The position numbers were made by a program, and so were the translations under genes. A stretch of DNA of 64,000 nucleotides from sequence record NC_006268.1. One strand, given 5' to 3'. Positions 1,517-14,067 of this stretch are shown one piece after another (the stretch's first letter is position 1; each line of letters opens with the position of its first letter). The notes below the pieces were generated by a model. It ran no database searches and was not told where the DNA came from. It saw only the letters and a list, made by a program, of their open reading frames with translations.

Positions 1517-3766
1517 TTGTTTTATAATTTTAGCGAAGAAACAGTGTACGCCCTCAGGCGTAATCGCATAGAAGGTCAAGATTATATTAGGCTGATCGAA
1601 ACGGATAAATTTCCTGCCGACCTGATTAACGAGGCCTCAGCAAGAGAAAAAAGTAGAGGCGGAATGCCGCCGATATGGGAAATGGTCTTTTGGTGGACTA
1701 GGAAACCCTTAATAGGGGCTAGAGCAATTATCGCAGCCTCACTGCTGCCAGAGTCTGTTGATAAAAGCAAGTTTTTGCGCTTGATTAGGCTCGATAGTAA
1801 CGAATCAGTCATTTACCATAAATATAATCCAGCTGATATACCCTCGTTAAAGAAGTACTTTAAAAATGCTAAGCTTCTAGACCCCTTTGCAGGTTTTTGT
1901 TCAATACCTCTAGAGGCTATGCGGCTAGGCGTAGGGGAAGTCGTAGCTTCTGACCTTTTGCCTACGGCCTACATTTTTCTTAAAGCCATTTTGGAAATAC
2001 CTAAATGGGCCAGAGATAATGACCTTCATGAGACACTTATTAAAGATGTTGAGAAATGGGGCAATTGGATATTAGATGAGTTAAGAAAGGATCAAGAACT
2101 TCAAGAATTATACGATGATGACGCCGAAGGTTACATTGGTACATGGGAAATAAGATGCCCACATTGTAGTAATTATACACCACTAATAGGGAGTTGGTGG
2201 TTAGCGAGAAAGCCAAACGGAAAAAGAAATAAGAAAGAAAATGGTGGATTTAAAAGACTTGCCTGGATGGTACCAAATATCGTTGATAATAAGGTTGATA
2301 TAGATGTAATTGACCTTAATAAAGAATTATCTAGAGATAAAATAAATGCTAAAGTTGACGCTGAACAAGGAATTGTAGAAGTTTATGAGGAAGTAAACGG
2401 CGTACCTCAGCTTGAAAAAACTTATCACGTACAACAACCTAACGTAGATATAAAAAGAAACACTTCAAAATGCTTAGTATGCAATACCACGATAAAAGGG
2501 GGAAGGCAATTTTACGTTAAGGATGCGGTGAGGGATTGGAATGAAAACTTAGAAAAATACTTAGCGGGGGAGATAAGTAAAGAGCAATTATTAAATAGTA
2601 AGGTAAGACCACGAATAATAGTCAAAATAAAAAATGGCATAATCTTTGAGAAGGTAGAAGATCAAGAGAAGTTATGGAAGGCTTTAGAGATGCTTAAACA
2701 AATGTGGGGAGATCCTGATATACCAACGGAGCTCGCACAGAATTACGAAAGCCGCCACATGCCTATTAGTTTTGGCGTTGATAAGTTCTTTAAATTCTTT
2801 AATCCACGCCAGCTTTTAACTGCTGTTAAGTTTGTTAAATTACTACGTGAGGTTGGGAAGAGAGTTGAGGAAGAGAAATTAAAAGTATGGAATAAGGATA
2901 AGGCGAGAAAATACGCTGAAGCAATAGTTACGTATTTAGCAATGTTATTAGCTAAATTTGTGAATTACAGTTCGATTGGTACCGCCTGGGATGCTACTAC
3001 TGTTAAAAGTTTCGAGAGTTTTTCAATGCGAGGGCTGAGGATAATGTGGAATTGGGTAGATATTACTCCTTACAGTAAGCTGAGTGGATCTTTTATAAAA
3101 TCACTGCGCAGTGTATTAAGAGGCCTTCAATATCTTATTGACGCAATTTCGGACAGCCCTACTAGAGTCAGGGTTTTGTTGGATGACGCTACTAAACTAA
3201 ATAAGATTACAGAGAACTTCGATTTAATAGTTACCGACCCGCCATATTGGGATGATGTTCCCTATACAGAGCTTAGTGATTTATATTATGTATGGTTAAA
3301 AAGGGCTTTAAGTGATGTTAAGGAAGTTAATGGGGTTTTAAAGAGGGTTCCTAAATTTTATCCAGAGGCATTCTTTGATAATGCTGGGAATGAAATAGAA
3401 ACTCAGTGGAAGAAATTTGCAATTAGAGAAATTAGTAGATATAGGGGAAGAGTTAAGTACTTTTATAAAAATGTTGATGCCTCTGAGCATTTTAAACGAT
3501 TGCTGGCAGAAGCTTTTAAGACAATTGCAGATAGACTAAAGGAAAATGGAATTTTAGTAACGTATTATGCTCATCCCACTCCAGAGGCTTGGAATGCACT
3601 TTTAGAAGCTGGTTGGAGTAAGGCAGGTTTAAGAATAACTAAAACGCATTTATTTGTGACAGAATCTAGAACGCGGCTTACGGCGCAAGACAAAATTACA
3701 GTAAATACGTCGCTGGTCATAGTGTGGCGTAAGAGAAAGACGATGAAGAAACGTTTAAAAATATAA
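1517..3766 (+). CDS. DUF1156/COG1743-type adenine-specific DNA methyltransferase with Zn ribbons
   Basis: N-terminal FWWTRKPL motif, motif I DPFAGFCSIP, CPHC and CLVC Zn knuckles, motif IV TDPPY. Confidence 0.85.
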   Translation: MFYNFSEETVYALRRNRIEGQDYIRLIETDKFPADLINEASAREKSRGGMPPIWEMVFWWTRKPLIGARAIIAASLLPESVDKSKFLRLIRLDSNESVIYHKYNPADIPSLKKYFKNAKLLDPFAGFCSIPLEAMRLGVGEVVASDLLPTAYIFLKAILEIPKWARDNDLHETLIKDVEKWGNWILDELRKDQELQELYDDDAEGYIGTWEIRCPHCSNYTPLIGSWWLARKPNGKRNKKENGGFKRLAWMVPNIVDNKVDIDVIDLNKELSRDKINAKVDAEQGIVEVYEEVNGVPQLEKTYHVQQPNVDIKRNTSKCLVCNTTIKGGRQFYVKDAVRDWNENLEKYLAGEISKEQLLNSKVRPRIIVKIKNGIIFEKVEDQEKLWKALEMLKQMWGDPDIPTELAQNYESRHMPISFGVDKFFKFFNPRQLLTAVKFVKLLREVGKRVEEEKLKVWNKDKARKYAEAIVTYLAMLLAKFVNYSSIGTAWDATTVKSFESFSMRGLRIMWNWVDITPYSKLSGSFIKSLRSVLRGLQYLIDAISDSPTRVRVLLDDATKLNKITENFDLIVTDPPYWDDVPYTELSDLYYVWLKRALSDVKEVNGVLKRVPKFYPEAFFDNAGNEIETQWKKFAIREISRYRGRVKYFYKNVDASEHFKRLLAEAFKTIADRLKENGILVTYYAHPTPEAWNALLEAGWSKAGLRITKTHLFVTESRTRLTAQDKITVNTSLVIVWRKRKTMKKRLKI

Positions 3767-6394: not shown

Positions 6395-7171
6395 GTGATG
6401 ATAGTCAGACTAGTATCATATTCGCCTGATGGTGAAAAGGTAGTAGCTATTGCGGCTAAAATGAGTAGGAGTAGGAAAGGTTGGGATTATCATGAAAAAG
6501 AAATGACTGATGAAGAGATTGAGACATGGATTAGGGATGCGATTCTACATGGGTATTGGTCTGTGTTAGAGCATTCAGTTTATACTTTTTCTATTGAGGG
6601 AATTTCTAGGGTTGCGTCTCATCAGCTTGTTAGGCATAGAATAGCCTCTTATACGCAAATGTCTCACAGGTTTGCTAGGCCAATAGATGAATATTATAAG
6701 CCAATAATACCTATTAGCATTAAAAAGAGGGATGTTCATGAGCTAGTTAACAAAGCTTACAATAATGCTTATGAAATTTATTATGAATTATTGAAGAGCG
6801 GAATACCCGAAGAGGATGCACGTTATGTTTTACCAAACGCTGTTAATACAAACATCGTAGTAACTATGAATGCTAGGGAATTATATAATTTCTTTTCCCT
6901 AAGGCTCTGTTCAAGAGCTCAATGGGAAATTAGAGCAATTGCATGGAGAATGTTAGAGGAAGTAAAGAAAGTTCACCCAAGATTATTTAGATATGCTGGA
7001 CCAAACTGCATAATACATGAGAATTTCATAAGAAATGAGTATATAACTTTAGATGATGTGCTTAAAAATCACAATATAGAGTTTATATCCCAAAGATGTA
7101 TTGAAGGAGTTAATAGGGATGGAATTATAAAATGCATCATTAACTCACGTGGGGTTATTAACTCGATTTGA
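6395..7171 (+). CDS. thyX: Flavin-dependent thymidylate synthase
   Basis: ThyX signature [11 protein letters not shown], plus GHxSVLEH-like HGYWSVLEH and [12 protein letters not shown]. Confidence 0.96.
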
Positions 7172-7190
7172 AGTGATGAAAACTTATTTA

Positions 7191-7230
7191 CGAATTTCGG
7201 ACTTTTGCTATATACAGGAACTTCGAACTT
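7191..7230 (-). repeat. Inverted 40-bp core of the 139-bp repeat
   Basis: Reverse complement of cgaatttcggacttttgctatatacaggaacttcgaactt matches 50672-50711 with 1 mismatch. Confidence 0.9.
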
Positions 7231-7286
7231 TGATCACTAAATTTTTCCCTTTTTTAAGTTTCATTAGTACGAGAAAAATTCATGAC

Positions 7287-7334
7287 GGTAGTAAATTTAC
7301 AGAATTGTCATTACAATTCTACAAATTTATGGAA
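7287..7334. repeat. 48-bp palindromic element (box-TTGTCATTACAA-box)
   Basis: ggtagtaaatttacagaa ttgtcattacaa ttctacaaatttatggaa. Confidence 0.85.
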
Positions 7335-7467
7335 ACCCCTTTTTTCCCTTATGTTTTTATGACTATAATGTTATGTTAACATGTAATTTTACGTTTTTCA
7401 CTATGGAGCTTATGATAGAAAGTTTTATAAGCTTAAATGACCATACTAATAATCGGTGGGAAACATG
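7335..7467 (+). promoter_or_regulatory. Triplicated promoter cassette, copy 1 (BRE-TATA AGAAAGTTTTATAAGCTTAAA at 7417-7437, SD GGTGG)
   Basis: Collinear similarity with 9372-9503 and 14120-14251. Confidence 0.85.
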
Positions 7468-7917
7468 ATAGATATCGTTCCAGATGGTTTAAGTAAAGAA
7501 TCGTGGGAAAGTATAAGGGAAGAAGTCGCACAAGACCAAGAAGGCCTTCAATTTTTGCAAGGATTCGGTCTTGAAAATCCTGAAAATGCAACATTGGATG
7601 AGATAATTTATGTGCTATCAAAAATCTTAAGAACTTTAGAAGATAATACGAAAATCCAAGAATATCTTGTTCATCTTCAAGAAGTCTTGCAGATGTACGT
7701 GCATATCGAAAGCTGGAGAGACGTTCTTGCCTTAAATGTAGTTTACGTCGTTCCTGAATATGAGAATGAAAGAGCAAAAAAGGCCCACAGAATCCTGATG
7801 TTCTATTTCATGCAGCATCTTCAGCTCAAACTTAATCAAACTCCATTAACAATGAAGAGGGCGAGATTTGTAAGGAATACAATCAAAACCATACGCGAAA
7901 TGGTATTTAATATATAG
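7456..7917 (+). CDS. Hypothetical protein
   Basis: About 150 aa; likely start ATG 7465 downstream of the conserved promoter cassette and GGTGG SD. Confidence 0.75.
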   Translation: MGNMIDIVPDGLSKESWESIREEVAQDQEGLQFLQGFGLENPENATLDEIIYVLSKILRTLEDNTKIQEYLVHLQEVLQMYVHIESWRDVLALNVVYVVPEYENERAKKAHRILMFYFMQHLQLKLNQTPLTMKRARFVRNTIKTIREMVFNI

Positions 7918-7934
7918 GGAAAAATGATAAGGGT

Positions 7935-8798
7935 ATGAAGATCGTTTTAGGCCTGCCTGATGAAAGAGTGAAGTTATGGAAGTTAGGTGTACCGTTAATG
8001 ATTAATCAGTTGGTATGGGACAATGTAGAATGGGAAAATGAAACATGGGTAGATTCTGGTGGCTATCAAATAATGGTTAGAAAAATGCAGATTAGTGTAG
8101 ATGCCGTATTAGATAAATACAAGAGGCTTGATGCAGACTATTACATTAGTCTCGATATACCTGCAACACCTTGCGAAAAGCCTTCAGAGCTTAATTTCAA
8201 GCACTTTGAGTACTTATACACGAGACTAGATAAGAATATAATACCAGTCATTCACGCTTATGATGTTGAAAGTATTAAAAAGGCTATTGATTTCTACTCT
8301 CAATATACGGATTATATCGCCTTTGGTGGGATAGTTCCACCATCTCTTAATAAGGTAGCTAGCCAAAAGCTAGCAGTTGCAATGTACCGCCTTGTTAGGA
8401 AAGAATGGAAGGGTAAAATTCACGTTTTAGGTGCTGGTTCTCCTTTCATGAGAAAGGTTTTTTATGATGCTGATAGTGTTGACACATCAACTTATAGAGT
8501 AAAGGCAATACATGGTATGGTGTTATTGCCTGGAAAAGGAGAAAGATATGTTGGAGAGAGAAAAATAAGTTGGGGGGCTAGACGAATTAGTGAAGATGAA
8601 CTTGAATCGCTAAAGGCTTTTCTAGAGAAGACTCACTACCCATTTCCTATAAGGGTTGATAATTGGATAGATAGATCACTTGTTAACGCATGGGTTTTGT
8701 TACACAGTGAGTATGAGGAAGATAATCCTCTTATCAGATATGCACACAACATAACAGACCCAGAGGCTGAGATAAATGAGTTATGTAGAAAGCTGTGA
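7935..8798 (+). CDS. tRNA-guanine transglycosylase-fold protein, DpdA-like (probable DNA 7-deazaguanine inserting enzyme)
   Basis: TGT motifs DSGGYQ, SLDIP, PVIH, FGG, HVLGAG, DSVDTSTY. No CxCxxC Zn site and no PUA domain. Confidence 0.85.
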   Translation: MKIVLGLPDERVKLWKLGVPLMINQLVWDNVEWENETWVDSGGYQIMVRKMQISVDAVLDKYKRLDADYYISLDIPATPCEKPSELNFKHFEYLYTRLDKNIIPVIHAYDVESIKKAIDFYSQYTDYIAFGGIVPPSLNKVASQKLAVAMYRLVRKEWKGKIHVLGAGSPFMRKVFYDADSVDTSTYRVKAIHGMVLLPGKGERYVGERKISWGARRISEDELESLKAFLEKTHYPFPIRVDNWIDRSLVNAWVLLHSEYEEDNPLIRYAHNITDPEAEINELCRKL

Positions 8799-9339
8799 AC
8801 ACTTAGAGAAATATCTTGGCTCAAATAATGAACCAATAATAAAAAAGCCTGGCTTTGACCCATTCCAACACTCTGTCGTAAGGAAATGGCATGAGTACTT
8901 TCTCAATAACTGGTATTCCAAAAAAGAAAAAGAAATAGCGCTTTTACTGCCTTGCACATCAGTTAAGCCTTATAATAGGTCAGCTACTCATAAATTAGCA
9001 TACTCGTTATTGAGGAAATATAAACTTGAGGATAAGGTTCAGGTTTACTCTGTCTCTGAGCCGATGTTGTTAGTCCCTAGAGAATTAGAGAACTGTTACC
9101 CTTTCAATTCTTATGATTATCCCCCTTCTTTGATGACTGAAGAAGAAAAACAAGAGTTTATCAGACTACTTTCCATTGCCTTATCTCACATTCACAAGAT
9201 TCATAAAAGAATAGTGGCAGTTTTGCCTAAGCATCATTACAAGATAGTTTATGAGGCTTCTAAAAACATCCCAATCGAACTTTATCCTTATGGCAAATTA
9301 GCTTTTAAAACGATAGCAAATGTTATAATGAAGATATGA
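8776..9339 (+). CDS. Archaeosine synthase ArcS-like (DUF5591) protein
   Basis: Exact ArcS motif PC-x3-KPY-x2-S-x2-H (PCTSVKPYNRSATH) plus SEPMLLVPRELE; overlaps the TGT-fold gene by 23 nt. Confidence 0.85.
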   Translation: MSYVESCEHLEKYLGSNNEPIIKKPGFDPFQHSVVRKWHEYFLNNWYSKKEKEIALLLPCTSVKPYNRSATHKLAYSLLRKYKLEDKVQVYSVSEPMLLVPRELENCYPFNSYDYPPSLMTEEEKQEFIRLLSIALSHIHKIHKRIVAVLPKHHYKIVYEASKNIPIELYPYGKLAFKTIANVIMKI

Positions 9340-9348
9340 ACAACTATA

Positions 9349-9371
9349 GACAATTCACCAATTTTATAGAA
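9349..9371. repeat. Right half of the palindromic element
   Basis: gacaa ttcaccaattttatagaa, 10 nt after the ArcS-like stop. Confidence 0.7.
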
Positions 9372-9503
9372 GCCCCTTTTTCCCCTTGTGTCTTTTGTTA
9401 CTACCGTTTATATTTTCACGTAATTTTACGTATTTGACTATGAAGCTCATGGTAGAAAGTTTTATAAGCTTAAAGTGTCACAGTGATAATCGGTGGGAAA
9501 ATG
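9372..9503 (+). promoter_or_regulatory. Triplicated promoter cassette, copy 2 (BRE-TATA at 9454-9474)
   Basis: Drives the multi-RHH array; identical 21-bp core. Confidence 0.85.
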
Positions 9504-9821
9504 GCAGAAAACGAAACCATAAAACTTGTAACTTTCAGATGCGAAGATAGTCTGTTTTTAAAGCTTGAGGAAGAGGCTAAAAAAGCTAACACCACTAAAA
9601 CGGCAATTATAAAGGCTGCAGTGACACGGCTTTTACAGCACAGTATTGATGAGATAAGGGAGTTAAACAAAAGAACTCCGACCTATTCGGGCAAACGCGT
9701 AATCACAATAATGCTTCCTGAGAGTCTTAACACACAACTAAATGCTATTGCAGAAAAAATAAGTACCAACAAGAGTGACTTGATAAGGACTGCGATAGTA
9801 GCTTATTTCAAGATAGCATAA
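9483..9821 (+). CDS. Tandem ribbon-helix-helix protein (2 RHH modules)
   Basis: LVTFRCEDSLFLKLEEEAKKANTTKTAIIKAAV and VITIMLPESLNTQLNAIAEKISTNKSDLIRTAI; likely start ATG 9501. Confidence 0.85.
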   Translation: MIIGGKMAENETIKLVTFRCEDSLFLKLEEEAKKANTTKTAIIKAAVTRLLQHSIDEIRELNKRTPTYSGKRVITIMLPESLNTQLNAIAEKISTNKSDLIRTAIVAYFKIA

Positions 9822-9824
9822 GAG

Positions 9825-10919
9825 GTGGCAAAGATGGCATATTTACGCTTTCCAATGCGTATCTCTTTACTTAATAAAGTAAATGAAGAAGCTGCCCGCT
9901 TAAATGTAAAACGAACACTTTTGCTGAGAGCTGCAATTCACGCATTTATCGAAAACCCGCCAGAGACTATACAACCATTACCAACTCCAATCGGCGGATT
10001 TGGGCGAAAAGAATCAATAAAAGTTTTCTTAACATTGCCAAAAGACACTTTAGAAAAAATTCGTTCTTACGCTGCTGCAAGAGGACTATCAATAAGAAAT
10101 GTAGCAGAGAAGGCAGTAGCTGATTTTCTTAACTTGTCTGATGAACAGAAACTAATTTATATAAATAAGGAGATGGAAAGACTTGCAGAGAAGAGAAAGG
10201 GAAAAATAGACGAAGAGTCTACACTACAATTGCTAGAGCCCGAGGCTTCAAAAGATCCTTCTCTACTGGTTCCAACAAGTTTCAAATGTGTAGATGACTT
10301 ACATAAGCTACTTGCAAAAGAGGCATGTGAAAGGGGAACAACTGCAAGTGAGCTCGTGAGAAGAGCTGTTGAAGAATTTTTGAAAAAATATGGCGATAAC
10401 CTTGAGGAAATCAAAAAGCTATATGAGGTTGCTAAAGACCTGTATTATATGGAGGTTGAGGACAAAACTTGTACTTTAAAAATACCAGTGTATATGACAG
10501 TACAATTAGCAAAAATAGCTAATAAGATGAATGTACCTAAGTCTGCATTAATTCGTCTTGCGATCGTGAAATATCTGAACCTGAGTGACACAAAGCCACA
10601 AAAACACACAAAGCCACAAAAACACATAATCTTCAAATGTGCGGCTAGCCTTGTTTCAATGTTAGAAGAAAAGTCTAAAAAAGCTAACACCGCAAAAGCC
10701 GCAATTGTAAGGGAGGCAGTGAAACAACTTTTACAGCATAGTGCTGATGAGATAAGGGAGTTAAGCAGAAGAAATCCGGCTTGTTCAGCCGACTATCTAG
10801 TTTCCGTAATGCTTCCTGAGAGCCTTAATACTCAGCTAGATATTATTGCAGAAAAAGTAAGGACCACTAAGAACGATCTGATGAGGACTGCATTAGCAGT
10901 TTATTTTAGGCTAGTGTGA
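9825..10919 (+). CDS. Multi-RHH DNA-binding protein (6 RHH modules)
   Basis: Six strand-helix-helix repeats, e.g. PTSFKCVDDLHKLLAKEACERGTTASELVRRAVEEFL; likely start ATG 9834. Confidence 0.85.
   Translation: MAKMAYLRFPMRISLLNKVNEEAARLNVKRTLLLRAAIHAFIENPPETIQPLPTPIGGFGRKESIKVFLTLPKDTLEKIRSYAAARGLSIRNVAEKAVADFLNLSDEQKLIYINKEMERLAEKRKGKIDEESTLQLLEPEASKDPSLLVPTSFKCVDDLHKLLAKEACERGTTASELVRRAVEEFLKKYGDNLEEIKKLYEVAKDLYYMEVEDKTCTLKIPVYMTVQLAKIANKMNVPKSALIRLAIVKYLNLSDTKPQKHTKPQKHIIFKCAASLVSMLEEKSKKANTAKAAIVREAVKQLLQHSADEIRELSRRNPACSADYLVSVMLPESLNTQLDIIAEKVRTTKNDLMRTALAVYFRLV
10588..10623 (+). repeat. Perfect 18-bp tandem duplication in an RHH inter-module linker
   Basis: acacaaagccacaaaaac x2 (TKPQKH twice). 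Confidence 0.9.
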
Positions 10920-10931
10920 GAGGTAACGAAA

Positions 10932-11993
10932 ATGGCGTATTTACACTTATATCTACATAAATCTTTATTAAAGAAAGTAAAGAAAGAAGCATCACGTTTA
11001 AATGTAAAACGAAAACTTTTGATGAGTGCTGCAATTCAGGCATTTGTCGAAAATCCGCCAGAAACCATAAATCTACCGCCAGACTTGAATAACGGATTTG
11101 AACTAACAATTGGCGTTACCTTAGAACTGCCTACCGATGTTGTAGAAAAGATTTATTCTTACGCTATGTCAAAAGGTCTTTCGGCAAAAAAAGTAGCGGA
11201 GATAGCGATAACTACTTTTCTTAGCCTTTCTGATGAACAGAAAATGATCTATATAGATAAGGAGATAAAAAGACTTGAAGAGAAGAGAAAGAGAAAACTA
11301 AGCGAAGAGCGCAAGTTTCAATTTCTGGAAAGTATTGCTTCAAAAGATCCTTCTCGATCAGTTCGAATAAGTTTCAATTGTGTAGATGACTTACATAAAC
11401 TACTTGTAAAAGAGGCACATGTAAGAGGAACAACAGCGAGTGAACTTGTAAGAAGGGCTATTGAAGAATTTTTACAAAACTACTATAAGGGCAAGATAAA
11501 AATAAGAAAGCTGTATGAGGCTACTAAAGACTCGCATTATAGCAAAGCTGGGGGCAAAGTATATGACCTAAAAGTACCTACATATATGCTATTACATTTA
11601 ATGGTAATAGCTGATAATGTGAAGTTGTCTGTGGCTATGCTTATTCGTCTTGCCATTATGAGATATCTAAAGCTGGTTGACATAGAGCCACTAAAACAAG
11701 TAAGCTTCTCATGTGCGGCTAGTCTTATTTTAATGTTAGAGGAGGAGGTTAAAAAAACTAACACCGCAAGAGATGCAATTATAAAGGAGGCAGTGAAACA
11801 ACTTTTACAGCATAGTGTCGATGAGATAAGGGAGTTAAGTAGAGGAACTCCTCCCTATTCAAGCGGCTATGAAGTTTCCGTAAAGCTTCCTGAGAGCCTT
11901 ATCACACAACTAGATGCTATTGCAGAAAAAATAAGGACTAGTAGAAGCAACCTCATAAGAACTGCTTTAGCAGTTTATTTTAGGTTGGTATAA
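10932..11993 (+). CDS. Multi-RHH DNA-binding protein (6 RHH modules), paralog of 9825-10919
   Basis: Collinear similarity to the preceding ORF across all six modules. Confidence 0.85.
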   Translation: MAYLHLYLHKSLLKKVKKEASRLNVKRKLLMSAAIQAFVENPPETINLPPDLNNGFELTIGVTLELPTDVVEKIYSYAMSKGLSAKKVAEIAITTFLSLSDEQKMIYIDKEIKRLEEKRKRKLSEERKFQFLESIASKDPSRSVRISFNCVDDLHKLLVKEAHVRGTTASELVRRAIEEFLQNYYKGKIKIRKLYEATKDSHYSKAGGKVYDLKVPTYMLLHLMVIADNVKLSVAMLIRLAIMRYLKLVDIEPLKQVSFSCAASLILMLEEEVKKTNTARDAIIKEAVKQLLQHSVDEIRELSRGTPPYSSGYEVSVKLPESLITQLDAIAEKIRTSRSNLIRTALAVYFRLV

Positions 11994-11995
11994 GG

Positions 11996-12817
11996 GTGGT
12001 AAAGATGGCATATTTATGCTTTTCAATGCGCAACTCTCTACTTAACAAGGTAAATGAAGAAGCTACCCGCTTAAATGTAAAACGAACACTTTTAATGAAA
12101 GCTGCAATTCAAGCGTTTATTGAAAACCCGCCACAAACCATAAAACCGTTACCAAATGCAATTGGTGGCTTTGGGCGAAAAGAGACAGCAAAAGTTTGTT
12201 TAGCATTACCAAAAGATATCGTAGAAAAGATTTATTCTTATGCTATGTCAAAAGGCCTACCGGCGAGAAAAGTAGCGGAGAAGACAATAGCTGATTTTCT
12301 TAACTTGACTGATAAACAAAAACTAATTTATATAAATAATGAAATAAAAAGAGTTATAGAGAATAGGAAAAGAAAACTAGATAAAGAGCATTCGCTTCAA
12401 TTACTGGAAAATATTGCTTCAAAAGAACCTTATCGGCTAGTTCCAATAAGTTTTAAATGTGTAGATGATCTACATAAACTACTTGCAAAAGAGGCACGTG
12501 AAAGAGGAATAACGGTAAGTGAGCTTGTAAGAAGGGCTATTGATGATCTTTTGCAGAAATATGGTAATAACTTTGAGAAAATCAAAAAGCTGTATGAGGC
12601 TGCTAAACATCTGTATTATATCGAAGTTTCGGCTAAGGATTGTTCCTTAAAAGTGCCTGCATATATGCTATTACAGCTAACTAAAATAGCTGATAAGGTG
12701 AAGTTGCCTAGGACTATACTCATTCGCCTTGCAATTGTGAGATATCTGAACTTGGTTGACGTACATCAAGAGGTTATACAAAGTGTTAGCAGCGCAAACA
12801 TAACACTAGCAGCGTGA
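11996..12817 (+). CDS. Multi-RHH DNA-binding protein (4 RHH modules)
   Basis: Paralog of modules 1-4 of 9825-10919; likely start ATG 12005. Confidence 0.85.
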   Translation: MVKMAYLCFSMRNSLLNKVNEEATRLNVKRTLLMKAAIQAFIENPPQTIKPLPNAIGGFGRKETAKVCLALPKDIVEKIYSYAMSKGLPARKVAEKTIADFLNLTDKQKLIYINNEIKRVIENRKRKLDKEHSLQLLENIASKEPYRLVPISFKCVDDLHKLLAKEARERGITVSELVRRAIDDLLQKYGNNFEKIKKLYEAAKHLYYIEVSAKDCSLKVPAYMLLQLTKIADKVKLPRTILIRLAIVRYLNLVDVHQEVIQSVSSANITLAA

Positions 12818-12822
12818 TGTAA

Positions 12823-14067
12823 ATGAAGTCTCTTGAGTTCATTATTCCTAATGCCTTGTTCGATAAAATAAAAGAAGAAGCAGAACGACTTAATGTGACC
12901 GACAAGCTTTTGATTAAGGCAGCTATTATTACGTTTGCCGAAAACCCTTCAGACGCTATAAAACCACTATCATATAATTATAGCAAAAAAGACTTAACGA
13001 GAATTTACTTATCAGTACCAAAAGATATTATTGAAAAGATTCGTCTTTACTCCAGTTCAAAAGGATTTTCAATTAGGAGAATAGTTTGGAGTATGGTAGA
13101 TGATTTCCTTACTCTAGATGATGAGAAGAAAAAGTTCTATATAGACAAAGTAAAAAGAAGATTATCCAGGTTTAGAGATGATCAAAATCGTCTAACAAAA
13201 CTACAAGAGGCTATAGCTTACGAAAATTTTAATGCGCCAATTTCAGCGAGTTTTAAATGTAATCCTCAGTTATACAAACTAATTGAGGATGAGGTAATAA
13301 AAAAACGCACAACAATAAGTGATCTTGTAAGACAGGCTATTGAAGAGTTTCTGAAAAAGTATGGTAATAACTACGAGGAAATCAAAAAACTACATGAGAC
13401 GGCTAATCAATTATTTCCTGAAAAAGGTCCTTGGAAAGGGCGCGCTATAAAGTTGCCTGCGTATATGTTGCTTCAATTAACAAAGATTTCGGAGCAGACG
13501 TCAGTCCCCAGAAGCGCTATTATTCGCCTTGCAATTATGAAACACATGAATTTGTTAAATAAAAGCACCATAGAACAGCAGAAGGTTACAAGAAATGAAG
13601 TATTAAACGATCCGCCAAATGACCCACCATCCAATGATCCCCCACAACAAAATAATAAAGACGAACTTGAGCAAGTAATACGTTTTGTTAATGTATCACT
13701 GCCAGACCCACTTTATAATTTATTAAAGAAATATGTAATGCTTAAGTACAATATTGATGATGAAAGACAGATTAAGCTTGAAGTTAGTAAAATTGTTGCA
13801 AAAGTATTGATACAATGGGCAAGGAGACGCTTCTTTAAGAGGCCTGATATTGAAACTTATGTGATATGGCAAAAGATTTTAGAAGAGCTAAAGACGAGCC
13901 TTTATCCTAGCCTGAGCAGAGGAACAGTGGTGAAGAAGCAGGATATTCAAGATGCAATGAAGGAAATAAAAGATGTTAAAAATATAACAGAGTTATTTGA
14001 AAAATTTAAGAGGCGTGGCTATCTAAAGGAAATCGATAAAGACAACGTTAAAATTCTACTCTTGTAA
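12823..14067 (+). CDS. Multi-RHH protein (4 modules) with NDPP linker and an additional C-terminal domain (possible RHH plus winged helix)
   Basis: Modules 1-4 are paralogous to its neighbours, followed by an NDPPNDPPSNDPP linker. The C-terminus ELFEKFKRRGYLKEIDKDNVKILLL resembles a wHTH wing. Confidence 0.8.
   Translation: MKSLEFIIPNALFDKIKEEAERLNVTDKLLIKAAIITFAENPSDAIKPLSYNYSKKDLTRIYLSVPKDIIEKIRLYSSSKGFSIRRIVWSMVDDFLTLDDEKKKFYIDKVKRRLSRFRDDQNRLTKLQEAIAYENFNAPISASFKCNPQLYKLIEDEVIKKRTTISDLVRQAIEEFLKKYGNNYEEIKKLHETANQLFPEKGPWKGRAIKLPAYMLLQLTKISEQTSVPRSAIIRLAIMKHMNLLNKSTIEQQKVTRNEVLNDPPNDPPSNDPPQQNNKDELEQVIRFVNVSLPDPLYNLLKKYVMLKYNIDDERQIKLEVSKIVAKVLIQWARRRFFKRPDIETYVIWQKILEELKTSLYPSLSRGTVVKKQDIQDAMKEIKDVKNITELFEKFKRRGYLKEIDKDNVKILLL

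What the first reader, a model, noticed from the sequence alone, without database searches (positions are those of the whole stretch)
7935..9339. TGT/DpdA-like plus ArcS-like gene pair: probable 7-deazaguanine modification of viral DNA
Seen: intact TGT catalytic Asp motifs (DSGG, SLDIP, DSVD) without Zn site or PUA domain, translationally coupled to a protein with the exact ArcS motif PCx3KPYx2Sx2H. No folE/queD/queE/queC in the window. Established: DpdA-type transglycosylases swap guanine for preQ0 in DNA, ArcS converts preQ0 to archaeosine, and Sulfolobales make preQ0 for tRNA. Inference: the virus uses host preQ0 to hypermodify its DNA against restriction enzymes or CRISPR. I recall a 7-deazaguanine derivative being reported for a related Sulfolobus spindle virus, so novelty may be limited; the exact product here is not predictable from sequence.
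Basis: partly seen in the sequence, partly recalled or inferred. Interest (0 to 1): 0.68.

Follow-up and report, generated by a model that had tools for sequence, protein, structure and literature searches.

The report
Known viral deazaguanine DNA-modification gene pair
These two overlapping genes of the archaeal virus STSV1 are an already published pair (DpdA plus ArcS2) that swaps a few guanines in viral DNA for a 7-deazaguanine base; the new part is that the host carries its own copy beside a possible defence module.

Summary
The window is Sulfolobus virus STSV1 (window position = record position minus 11294). In detail: ORF18 (7935-8798) is a minimal TGT-fold enzyme with invariant catalytic Asp residues, no zinc site and no PUA domain. 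ORF19 (8776-9339) overlaps it by 23 nt and is a stand-alone ArcS C1 domain with the exact PCx3KPYx2Sx2H motif.

The reading is already published. Hutinet 2019 lists these two STSV1 proteins as DpdA and ArcS. Cui 2023 found dCDG (0.04% of G), not dG+, in DNA of STSV2, whose proteins are 97.6% and 96% identical.

New here:
- The Sulfolobus tengchongensis genome encodes FolE, QueD, QueE, Gat-QueC and arcTGT. The host can therefore supply the base, contrary to the 2023 paper.
- Thirty of 47 Sulfolobaceae species genomes carry a full-length chromosomal copy of the transglycosylase (a remnant in one more), ArcS2 beside it in 28. It usually sits in the order TGT-like, ArcS2, HerA, 1011-aa ATPase, 232-aa protein, NurA. 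The pair and the ATPase are missing together in at least four places on a marker-gene tree.
- The viral genes branch beside the host-genus copies.

An earlier scan note (s1-165276, on STSV4) reached the same view. Verdict: already known pair; a host Dpd-like system is a lead only.

The parts
7935..8798 (+). ORF18: DpdA-type (TGT-fold) guanine transglycosylase, 287 aa. RefSeq annotates it from 7998.
   Evidence: PHROG 887 at 1.2e-54. AlphaFold pLDDT 92. VIA-align Z 21.6 to arcTGT 1iq8 over 252 residues at 3.1 A. Invariant D40, D74 and D183. Profile hits to arcTGT at 2e-6 and to bacterial DpdA 7ui4 at 0.037. Listed as DpdA by Hutinet 2019.
8776..9339 (+). ORF19: ArcS2, the stand-alone C1 catalytic domain of archaeosine synthase, 187 aa.
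   Evidence: Pfam DUF5591 at 1.6e-20 and NCBIfam ArcS at 1.6e-20, matching model positions 278-403 only. PDB 2q07 (AF0587) at 8.8e-8. The motif PCx3KPYx2Sx2H is invariant. 96% identical to STSV2_16.
8776..8798 (+). 23-nt overlap of the ORF19 start with the ORF18 end.
   Evidence: Sequence read directly. The host chromosomal pair has the same kind of overlap, 29 nt.
8763..8766 (+). GAGG Shine-Dalgarno-like site for ORF19, inside ORF18.
   Evidence: Sequence. Annotated as a ribosome-binding site in the RefSeq record.

Best explanation
ORF18 and ORF19 are the STSV1 copy of the published DpdA/ArcS2 module of the STSV spindle viruses.

ORF18 is a stripped-down tRNA-guanine-transglycosylase-fold enzyme. 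It has the barrel and the catalytic aspartates, but no zinc site and no RNA-binding domains. After replication it exchanges a small number of guanines in double-stranded viral DNA for a 7-deazaguanine base.

ORF19 is the isolated catalytic C1 domain of archaeosine synthase. It is made from the same transcript by an overlapping start, and it acts on the C7 side chain of that base.

The virus has no biosynthetic genes for the base. It draws the base (preQ0 or CDG) from the host's own archaeosine pathway.

Shown here: the fold, the conserved residues, the motif, the gene overlap, near-identity to STSV2, the host pathway genes, and that the viral genes branch beside the host-genus chromosomal copies (SH-aLRT 92, unrooted quick tree).
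Published, not tested here: 7-deazaguanine (dCDG) in STSV2 DNA, and dPreQ0 to dG+ conversion by a phage ArcS2.
Inferred: DNA as the substrate in STSV1, the exact product, and a protective role against host nucleases.
For: - The window is 100% identical to STSV1.
- ORF18: TGT fold at Z 21.6, pLDDT 92. Invariant Asp residues align to arcTGT Asp95 and Asp249. PHROG 887 at 1e-54.
- ORF19: DUF5591/ArcS C1 with an invariant motif.
- Published listing of exactly these two proteins as DpdA and ArcS.
- STSV2 orthologues are 97.6% and 96% identical, and STSV2 DNA carries dCDG.
- Vibrio phage nt-1 DpdA2 inserts dPreQ0, and dG+ appears only when its ArcS is co-expressed.
- The host genome encodes FolE, QueD, QueE-like, Gat-QueC and TgtA.
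- ORF18 has no PUA domain and ORF19 has no C2 or PUA domain, so the tRNA-binding parts are missing.
- S. acidocaldarius has archaeosine in its tRNA (PMC11298593) but no DUF5591 gene. The pair is therefore not needed for tRNA archaeosine.
Against: - No chemistry exists for STSV1 itself.
- In STSV2 the level is very low and the product (dCDG) is not what ArcS chemistry predicts. The authors concluded that further unknown proteins are needed.
- ORF18 does not reach any curated model: no Pfam TGT hit, no NCBIfam DpdA NF041059 hit, and only 20 bits to TgtA against a cut-off of 350. PADLOC finds nothing.
- Canonical ArcS makes a lysine adduct that needs the radical-SAM partner RaSEA. The virus has no radical-SAM gene.
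- The host genome searched may not be the strain used in the published work.
Confidence: 0.85

Rival explanations
1. Self-marking mimicry. This refines the purpose and does not replace the chemistry. Sulfolobaceae have a chromosomal 7-deazaguanine system in which the TGT-like/ArcS2 pair marks host DNA. A linked module of HerA, a 1011-aa ATPase, a 232-aa protein and NurA acts on unmarked DNA. The virus captured the marking half so that its DNA passes as self.
For: - The host S. tengchongensis has its own overlapping pair, 71% and 64% identical, followed on the same strand by HerA, a 1011-aa P-loop protein, a 232-aa protein and NurA.
- The same six-gene order is found in 14 of 21 Sulfolobaceae loci.
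- The 1011-aa protein is found in 30 of the 31 genomes with an ORF18 match (the exception holds only a remnant) and in 0 of the 16 without one. This includes genomes where the two are far apart.
- On a marker-gene tree they are absent together in at least four places. One genome (G140) keeps ArcS2 and a TGT-like remnant but not the ATPase.
- A universal neighbour, rSAM TIGR04084, shows no such pattern.
- A Conexivisphaera MAG, from another class, again has ArcS2, TGT-like, HerA and a homologue of the N-terminus of the 1011-aa protein together.
- The viral genes are sister to the host-genus clade.
- This NurA is one of five paralogues, not the best-scoring copy, taken to be the repair one.
Against: - No biochemistry exists for the cellular cluster, and no 7-deazaguanine has been reported in Sulfolobales DNA.
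- The synteny extends to unrelated housekeeping genes on the other side, so adjacency alone is weak evidence.
- The co-occurrence rests on few independent events and on a single-gene tree.
- PADLOC gives only generic HerA hits.
- The 1011-aa and 232-aa proteins have no recognisable nuclease or reader domain.
Confidence: 0.3
2. The pair acts on RNA. The virus re-creates a split archaeosine synthase or transglycosylase to modify host or viral tRNA, and the dCDG seen in STSV2 DNA is a side reaction.
For: - The closest solved relatives are tRNA enzymes.
- RefSeq names ORF18 a queuine tRNA-ribosyltransferase.
- ArcS accepts minimal substrates down to a nucleoside.
- The DNA modification level is very low.
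Against: - There are no PUA, C2 or other RNA-binding domains.
- The host already has a full-length TgtA and Gat-QueC for tRNA.
- Sulfolobaceae without the pair still make tRNA archaeosine.
- A 7-deazaguanine was found in virion DNA of STSV2.
Confidence: 0.06
3. ArcS2 does not make archaeosine in DNA. It makes a bulkier or labile amidine adduct, for example a lysine adduct as canonical ArcS does, and dCDG or traces of dG+ are breakdown products seen by targeted mass spectrometry.
For: - T. kodakarensis ArcS transfers lysine to preQ0, and RaSEA is needed to reach G+.
- The virus has no radical-SAM gene.
- In the published E. coli test, adding nt-1 ArcS removed 926-1607 dPreQ0 per 10^6 nt but produced only 4-7 dG+. 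Most of the product is therefore unaccounted for (Table 3).
- STSV2 shows dCDG instead of dG+.
Against: - No adduct has been observed.
- ArcS co-expression could simply lower DpdA activity or bind free preQ0.
- Alternatively, the host's CDG could be inserted directly.
Confidence: 0.2

Closest known systems
STSV2 DpdA (STSV2_15) and ArcS2 (STSV2_16), Cui et al. 2023, NAR 51:9214
   Same: Orthologues at 97.6% and 96% protein identity. Same order, same overlap, and the same position downstream of thyX.
   Different: Only STSV2 DNA was analysed chemically. STSV1 has a different small ORF between thyX and dpdA.
Phage DpdA1/DpdA2 with ArcS (Vibrio phage nt-1; Hutinet 2019, Cui 2023)
   Same: A TGT-fold DNA transglycosylase plus a stand-alone ArcS C1 domain. 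The base comes from the preQ0 pathway.
   Different: nt-1 also encodes FolE, QueD, QueE and QueC, whereas STSV1 encodes none. Sequence similarity to bacterial-phage DpdA is marginal: 25% identity at E 7e-5 to Synechococcus phages.
Bacterial Dpd system: DpdA (PDB 7UI4), DpdB, DpdC plus DpdD-K
   Same: A TGT-fold enzyme that inserts preQ0 into DNA at low density. In the profile alignment the bacterial DpdA also keeps only the second Asp of the nucleophile motif.
   Different: ORF18 does not match the NCBIfam DpdA model or any PADLOC model. No DpdB or DpdC was recognised here. The archaeal cellular cluster has HerA, NurA and a large ATPase instead.
Archaeal arcTGT (TgtA) and the ArcS-RaSEA archaeosine synthase
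   Same: Best structural and profile match for ORF18. ORF19 matches the C1 domain of ArcS with the full motif.
   Different: No zinc site, no C-terminal C1/C2/PUA domains on ORF18, no Nt/C2/PUA on ORF19, and no RaSEA. The scores are far below the equivalog cut-offs.
Rudivirus (SIRV1, 2, 5 and others) TGT-like proteins
   Same: Same protein family, 35-42% identical. They are also Sulfolobales viruses and are listed as DpdA singletons.
   Different: In the published table, rudiviruses carry the transglycosylase alone, without ArcS2.

Membership tests
TGT superfamily (tRNA/DNA-guanine transglycosylase fold) | (beta/alpha)8 barrel of the TGT type | tested here: met
   AlphaFold2 model with pLDDT 92.2. 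Foldseek top hit arcTGT 1iq8 at E 3.6e-10. VIA-align Z 21.6, 252 residues, 3.1 A.
TGT superfamily (tRNA/DNA-guanine transglycosylase fold) | Catalytic aspartates (arcTGT Asp95 and Asp249 equivalents) and the substrate Asp of the LDIP motif | tested here: met
   D40, D74 and D183 are invariant in 59 sequences. The HMM alignment places D40 and D183 on Asp95 and Asp249 of 1iq8. That these two are the catalytic residues is from my own knowledge of arcTGT.
TGT superfamily (tRNA/DNA-guanine transglycosylase fold) | Structural zinc site CxCxxC...H | tested here: not met
   Two Cys only (C80, C284), and no conserved Cys column.
TGT superfamily (tRNA/DNA-guanine transglycosylase fold) | Match to Pfam PF01702 at the gathering score | tested here: not met
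   No Pfam hit at E up to 1 and no PF01702 match in the whole virus record. NCBIfam TgtA scores 20 bits against a cut-off of 350.
DpdA (DNA-guanine transglycosylase) | TGT catalytic core without tRNA-binding domains, encoded with 7-deazaguanine genes in a virus or a Dpd island | tested here: met
   287 aa, barrel only. Overlapping ArcS2 gene. Listed as DpdA by the family's authors.
DpdA (DNA-guanine transglycosylase) | Match to the curated bacterial DpdA model NF041059 | tested here: not met
   Not among the hits at E up to 1. The profile hit to DpdA structure 7ui4 is only E 0.037.
DpdA (DNA-guanine transglycosylase) | 7-deazaguanine present in the element's DNA, dependent on the enzyme | not testable with these tools
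   Published for STSV2 only as presence of dCDG. Dependence on the enzyme is not shown for any STSV.
ArcS / ArcS2 (archaeosine synthase C1 domain, PF17884) | PF17884 match above the gathering score | tested here: met
   73.9 bits against 26.
ArcS / ArcS2 (archaeosine synthase C1 domain, PF17884) | Motif PC-x3-KPY-x2-S-x2-H | tested here: met
   P59, C60, K64, P65, Y66, S69 and H72, all invariant in 24 sequences.
Canonical ArcS (tRNA archaeosine synthase alpha subunit) | Nt (TGT-like), C2 and PUA domains fused to C1; RaSEA partner | tested here: not met
   Only model positions 278-403 of 575 are matched, at 73 bits against a cut-off of 440. No radical-SAM gene in the virus.
Bacterial-type Dpd restriction-modification system (considered for the host cluster) | DpdA with DpdB/DpdC and DpdD-K restriction genes | tested here: not met
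   PADLOC gives no Dpd hit for the pair or its neighbours, only generic HerA models. The resemblance is functional analogy only.

The most novel reading that the evidence does not exclude
Many Sulfolobaceae carry a chromosomal, archaeal analogue of the bacterial Dpd system. A TGT-like/ArcS2 pair marks cellular DNA with a 7-deazaguanine. A co-inherited module of HerA, a 1011-aa STAND-like ATPase, a 232-aa protein and NurA acts on unmarked DNA. STSV viruses, and perhaps rudiviruses, captured the marking genes to pass as self. A side prediction is that the true ArcS2 product is an adduct not yet looked for, with dCDG as its remnant.
Probability: 0.3. Interest if true: 0.75.

Novelty: already known. 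Interest (0 to 1): 0.35.

Why it matters
The viral gene pair itself adds nothing new. It was catalogued in 2019 and its twin in STSV2 was analysed in 2023.

What matters is the open question those authors left: where does the base come from, and why dCDG? The host genome now available encodes the full archaeosine precursor pathway, which removes the 'no source' puzzle.

The host-encoded pair, linked to a HerA/NurA-type module, gives a concrete and testable reason for the virus to carry these genes. If it holds, it would be the first 7-deazaguanine-based self/non-self system in archaea. It would also be an example of a virus stealing the marking half of such a system.

Tried and rejected
- Complex prediction on ORF18 + ORF19 gave no verdict (score 0.00). 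It is no evidence either way.
- PADLOC found nothing for the pair.
- Pfam, even relaxed to E 1, gave no family for the 1011-aa and 232-aa host proteins. There were only weak P-loop/STAND hints. The Atlas look-alikes were unnamed archaeal ATPases.
- I asked whether the radical-SAM gene about 7 kb upstream in the host (TIGR04084) could be the RaSEA partner. It is present in 46 of 47 Sulfolobaceae, including S. acidocaldarius. It is absent from M. jannaschii, H. volcanii and M. acetivorans, which have ArcS. So it is not RaSEA and is unrelated to the pair. It served as a negative control.
- I asked whether the host 1011-aa protein is simply Rad50. The cluster's NurA is one of five paralogues. Rejected.
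- An earlier scan note about an ACAGCTGT palindrome as a possible target site does not apply: there are 0 copies in this window.
- Papers by Phillips 2010 and 2012 and the original STSV1 paper (Xiang 2005) are not held. My recollection that the 2005 abstract called STSV1 DNA 'modified in an unusual fashion' is unverified.
- No paper in the library links 7-deazaguanine with HerA/NurA; the search was noisy.
- The careful tree search did not finish, so only the quick tree is reported.

Full report
**Identity of the window.** Bases 7000-10000 are 100% identical to Sulfolobus virus STSV1 (AJ783769 / NC_006268). Window position equals record position minus 11294. The finding covers STSV1 ORF18 (YP_077211, RefSeq 'queuine tRNA-ribosyltransferase') and ORF19 (YP_077212, 'hypothetical; conserved Sulfolobus protein').

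**Observation.** Both ORFs are present as described.
- ORF18 (7935-8798, 287 aa) has DSGG at 40-43, SLDIP at 72-76 and DSVD at 180-183.
- ORF19 (8776-9339, 187 aa) has P59-C60-x3-K64-P65-Y66-x2-S69-x2-H72.
- The ORF19 ATG lies 23 nt inside ORF18, with a GAGG 9 nt upstream of it.
- In an alignment of 59 family members D40, S41, G42, G43, Q45, D74 and D183 are invariant. D180 is not.
- In 24 ArcS2-type sequences every position of the motif is invariant.
- ORF18 has two non-conserved Cys and no Pfam domain, so the zinc site and the PUA domain are indeed missing.
- The whole virus record, not just the window, lacks QueC and radical-SAM genes.
- RefSeq starts ORF18 at window 7998. The 21 upstream residues are conserved in cellular homologues, so 7935 is the better start.

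**What the proteins are.**
- ORF18 matches PHROG 887 at 1.2e-54. It gets no Pfam hit, only 20 bits to NCBIfam TgtA, and nothing to the NCBIfam DpdA model.
- An AlphaFold2 model built on the family alignment is confident, with pLDDT 92. It has the TGT barrel: Foldseek E 3.6e-10 to arcTGT 1iq8, and VIA-align Z 21.6 over 252 residues at 3.1 A. Bacterial and human TGT score Z 20-21.7.
- A family profile hits arcTGT at 2e-6 and the bacterial DNA-guanine transglycosylase DpdA (7ui4) at 0.037.
- The alignment puts D40 and D183 on arcTGT Asp95 and Asp249. Like bacterial DpdA, the family keeps only the second Asp of the nucleophile motif.
- ORF19 matches Pfam DUF5591 (73.9 bits) and the C1 part of the NCBIfam ArcS model, positions 278-403 of 575. 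It also matches the split-ArcS fragment AF0587, PDB 2q07.

**Prior knowledge.**
- Hutinet et al. 2019 (PMC6884629), Supplementary Data 1, lists 'NC_006268 Sulfolobus virus STSV1' with YP_077211 under DpdA and YP_077212 under ArcS.
- Cui et al. 2023 (PMC10516641) analysed STSV2 DNA. They found dCDG at 149 per 10^6 nt (0.04% of G) and no dG+.
- They renamed the stand-alone domain ArcS2. They showed that Vibrio phage nt-1 DpdA2 inserts dPreQ0 and that dG+ appears when its ArcS is co-expressed.
- They stated that the host encodes no Q/G+ pathway and that the source of the base is unknown.
- The STSV2 proteins are 97.6% and 96% identical to those here and lie in the same arrangement downstream of thyX.
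- The finding is therefore already known. By my arithmetic the STSV2 level is about 23 modified bases per genome.

**Source of the base.** The S. tengchongensis chromosome CP146016 (GCA_036967215.1) encodes the following:

| Gene | Evidence |
|---|---|
| FolE | PF01227, 1.2e-61 |
| QueD | PF01242, 1.8e-20 |
| QueE-like | 208-aa radical-SAM protein whose five best NCBIfam hits are all QueE models |
| Gat-QueC | 464 aa, GATase plus QueC; TIGR00364 at 161 bits against a cut-off of 150 |
| arcTGT | full-length; TgtA at 550 bits against a cut-off of 350 |

Because the host's only QueC is the Gat-QueC fusion, CDG and G+ base may be more available than free preQ0. That could bear on the dCDG result (inference).

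**A cellular counterpart.**
- ORF18 homologues at 50-71% identity sit in chromosomes of many Sulfolobaceae, including the host (P0011, 71%). ORF19 homologues do too (host 64%).
- In the host the two genes overlap by 29 nt. They are followed on the same strand by a HerA-type ATPase (535 aa), a 1011-aa protein, a 232-aa protein and a NurA-domain protein.
- Among 47 Sulfolobaceae species genomes, 31 match ORF18 and 29 match ORF19: 28 match both, always close together (adjacent or within about 2.5 kb), two match ORF18 only, and one holds ArcS2 beside a 48-residue ORF18 remnant.
- In 14 of 21 loci examined the six genes keep this order.
- The 1011-aa protein is found in 30 genomes. These are the same ones that match ORF18, apart from G140, which keeps ArcS2 and a 48-residue TGT-like remnant. 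This holds even where the two are hundreds of kilobases apart or on other contigs.
- In a sample of 121 genomes of the order, it occurs only in the nine that carry the close (above 50% identity) form of ORF18.
- On a tree of a universal neighbour gene, the pair and the 1011-aa protein are absent together in at least four separate places. That neighbour (rSAM TIGR04084) is present in 46 of 47 genomes and serves as a control.
- A Conexivisphaera MAG from another class has ArcS2, TGT-like, two unknown genes, HerA and a homologue of the N-terminus of the 1011-aa protein in a row.
- The cluster's NurA is one of five paralogues in the host and not the best-scoring one. The 1011-aa protein has only weak P-loop/STAND signals.
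- S. acidocaldarius has tRNA archaeosine (PMC11298593) but no DUF5591 gene. The pair is therefore not the tRNA archaeosine machinery.

**Origin of the viral genes.** In a quick maximum-likelihood tree the STSV sequences are sister to the Saccharolobus / S. tengchongensis chromosomal clade (SH-aLRT 92), inside the Sulfolobaceae radiation. The rudivirus proteins form a long branch within the same radiation. This fits capture from a host lineage, but the tree is quick and unrooted.

**Mechanism.**
- Most likely (0.85): ORF18 exchanges a few guanines in viral dsDNA for a host-made 7-deazaguanine, and ORF19 alters its side chain. The role would be to blunt a nuclease-based host defence.
- The purpose may be more specific (0.3): copying the host's own mark so that a host HerA/ATPase/NurA module spares the viral DNA.
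- The product is uncertain. Canonical ArcS transfers lysine and needs RaSEA, which the virus lacks.
- In the published E. coli test, ArcS co-expression removed nearly all dPreQ0 but yielded only 4-7 dG+ per 10^6 nt. The main product may therefore not have been looked for.
- A tRNA role is unlikely (0.06).

**Limits.** There is no chemistry for STSV1. The genome handles carry no taxonomy. The co-occurrence rests on few events. The complex prediction gave no verdict. Three key older papers are not held. It is not independent evidence, and I re-derived each point here.

Noticed in passing
window 7935-7997: RefSeq starts STSV1 ORF18 at window 7998 (M22). The 21 codons upstream are conserved in the STSV-like and cellular homologues shown, so the public CDS looks truncated at its 5' end.
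   Followed up: yes
L003 1462-2853 (-); L007 1009-2517 (-); L008 1495-1908 (-); L047 1492-2115 (+); G001:C1:2371699-2372250: The S. tengchongensis genome (CP146016) encodes Gat-QueC, arcTGT, QueD, a QueE-like protein and FolE. This contradicts the published statement that the STSV host has no Q/G+ pathway genes.
   Followed up: yes
L002 10001-18144: A host six-gene cluster on one strand: TGT-like, ArcS2, HerA-type ATPase, 1011-aa P-loop protein, 232-aa protein, NurA-domain protein. It is conserved in 14 of 21 Sulfolobaceae loci. The 1011-aa protein co-occurs with the pair in 30 of 31 genomes with an ORF18 match and in 0 of 16 without one.
   Followed up: partly
G140:C1:1400304-1401009: One Sulfolobaceae genome keeps an intact ArcS2 gene beside a 48-residue remnant of the TGT-like gene and lacks the 1011-aa protein. 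It looks like a system in decay.
   Followed up: no
L043 198-9639: A Conexivisphaera MAG contig carries ArcS2, TGT-like, two unknown genes, a HerA homologue that looks frameshifted, a homologue of the N-terminus of the 1011-aa protein, and a protein of more than 1200 aa. This repeats the linkage outside Sulfolobaceae.
   Followed up: partly
window 1664-3766 and 6395-7171: Upstream of the pair the virus encodes a 700-aa protein annotated as DNA methyltransferase (ORF12; Pfam DUF1156 and Cons_hypoth95) and ThyX. This part of the genome gathers DNA and nucleotide modification genes.
   Followed up: partly
window 9483-14067: Directly downstream lies an array of five paralogous genes (ORF20-24). 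Ribbon-helix-helix domains were confirmed in ORF20 (two stretches) and ORF21, and the translations share repeated segments.
   Followed up: no
L041 6049-8963: In Ignisphaera MAGs a roughly 40%-identical TGT-like gene stands alone, without ArcS2 beside it. It lies divergent from a 593-aa radical-SAM protein with a Zn-ribbon and next to ribonucleotide reductase. Its function is unknown.
   Followed up: no
PMC10516641, Table 3: In the published E. coli assay, nt-1 DpdA2 alone gives 926-1607 dPreQ0 per 10^6 nt. With ArcS the dPreQ0 falls to 0-11 while dG+ reaches only 4-7. Most of the expected product is unaccounted for.
   Followed up: no
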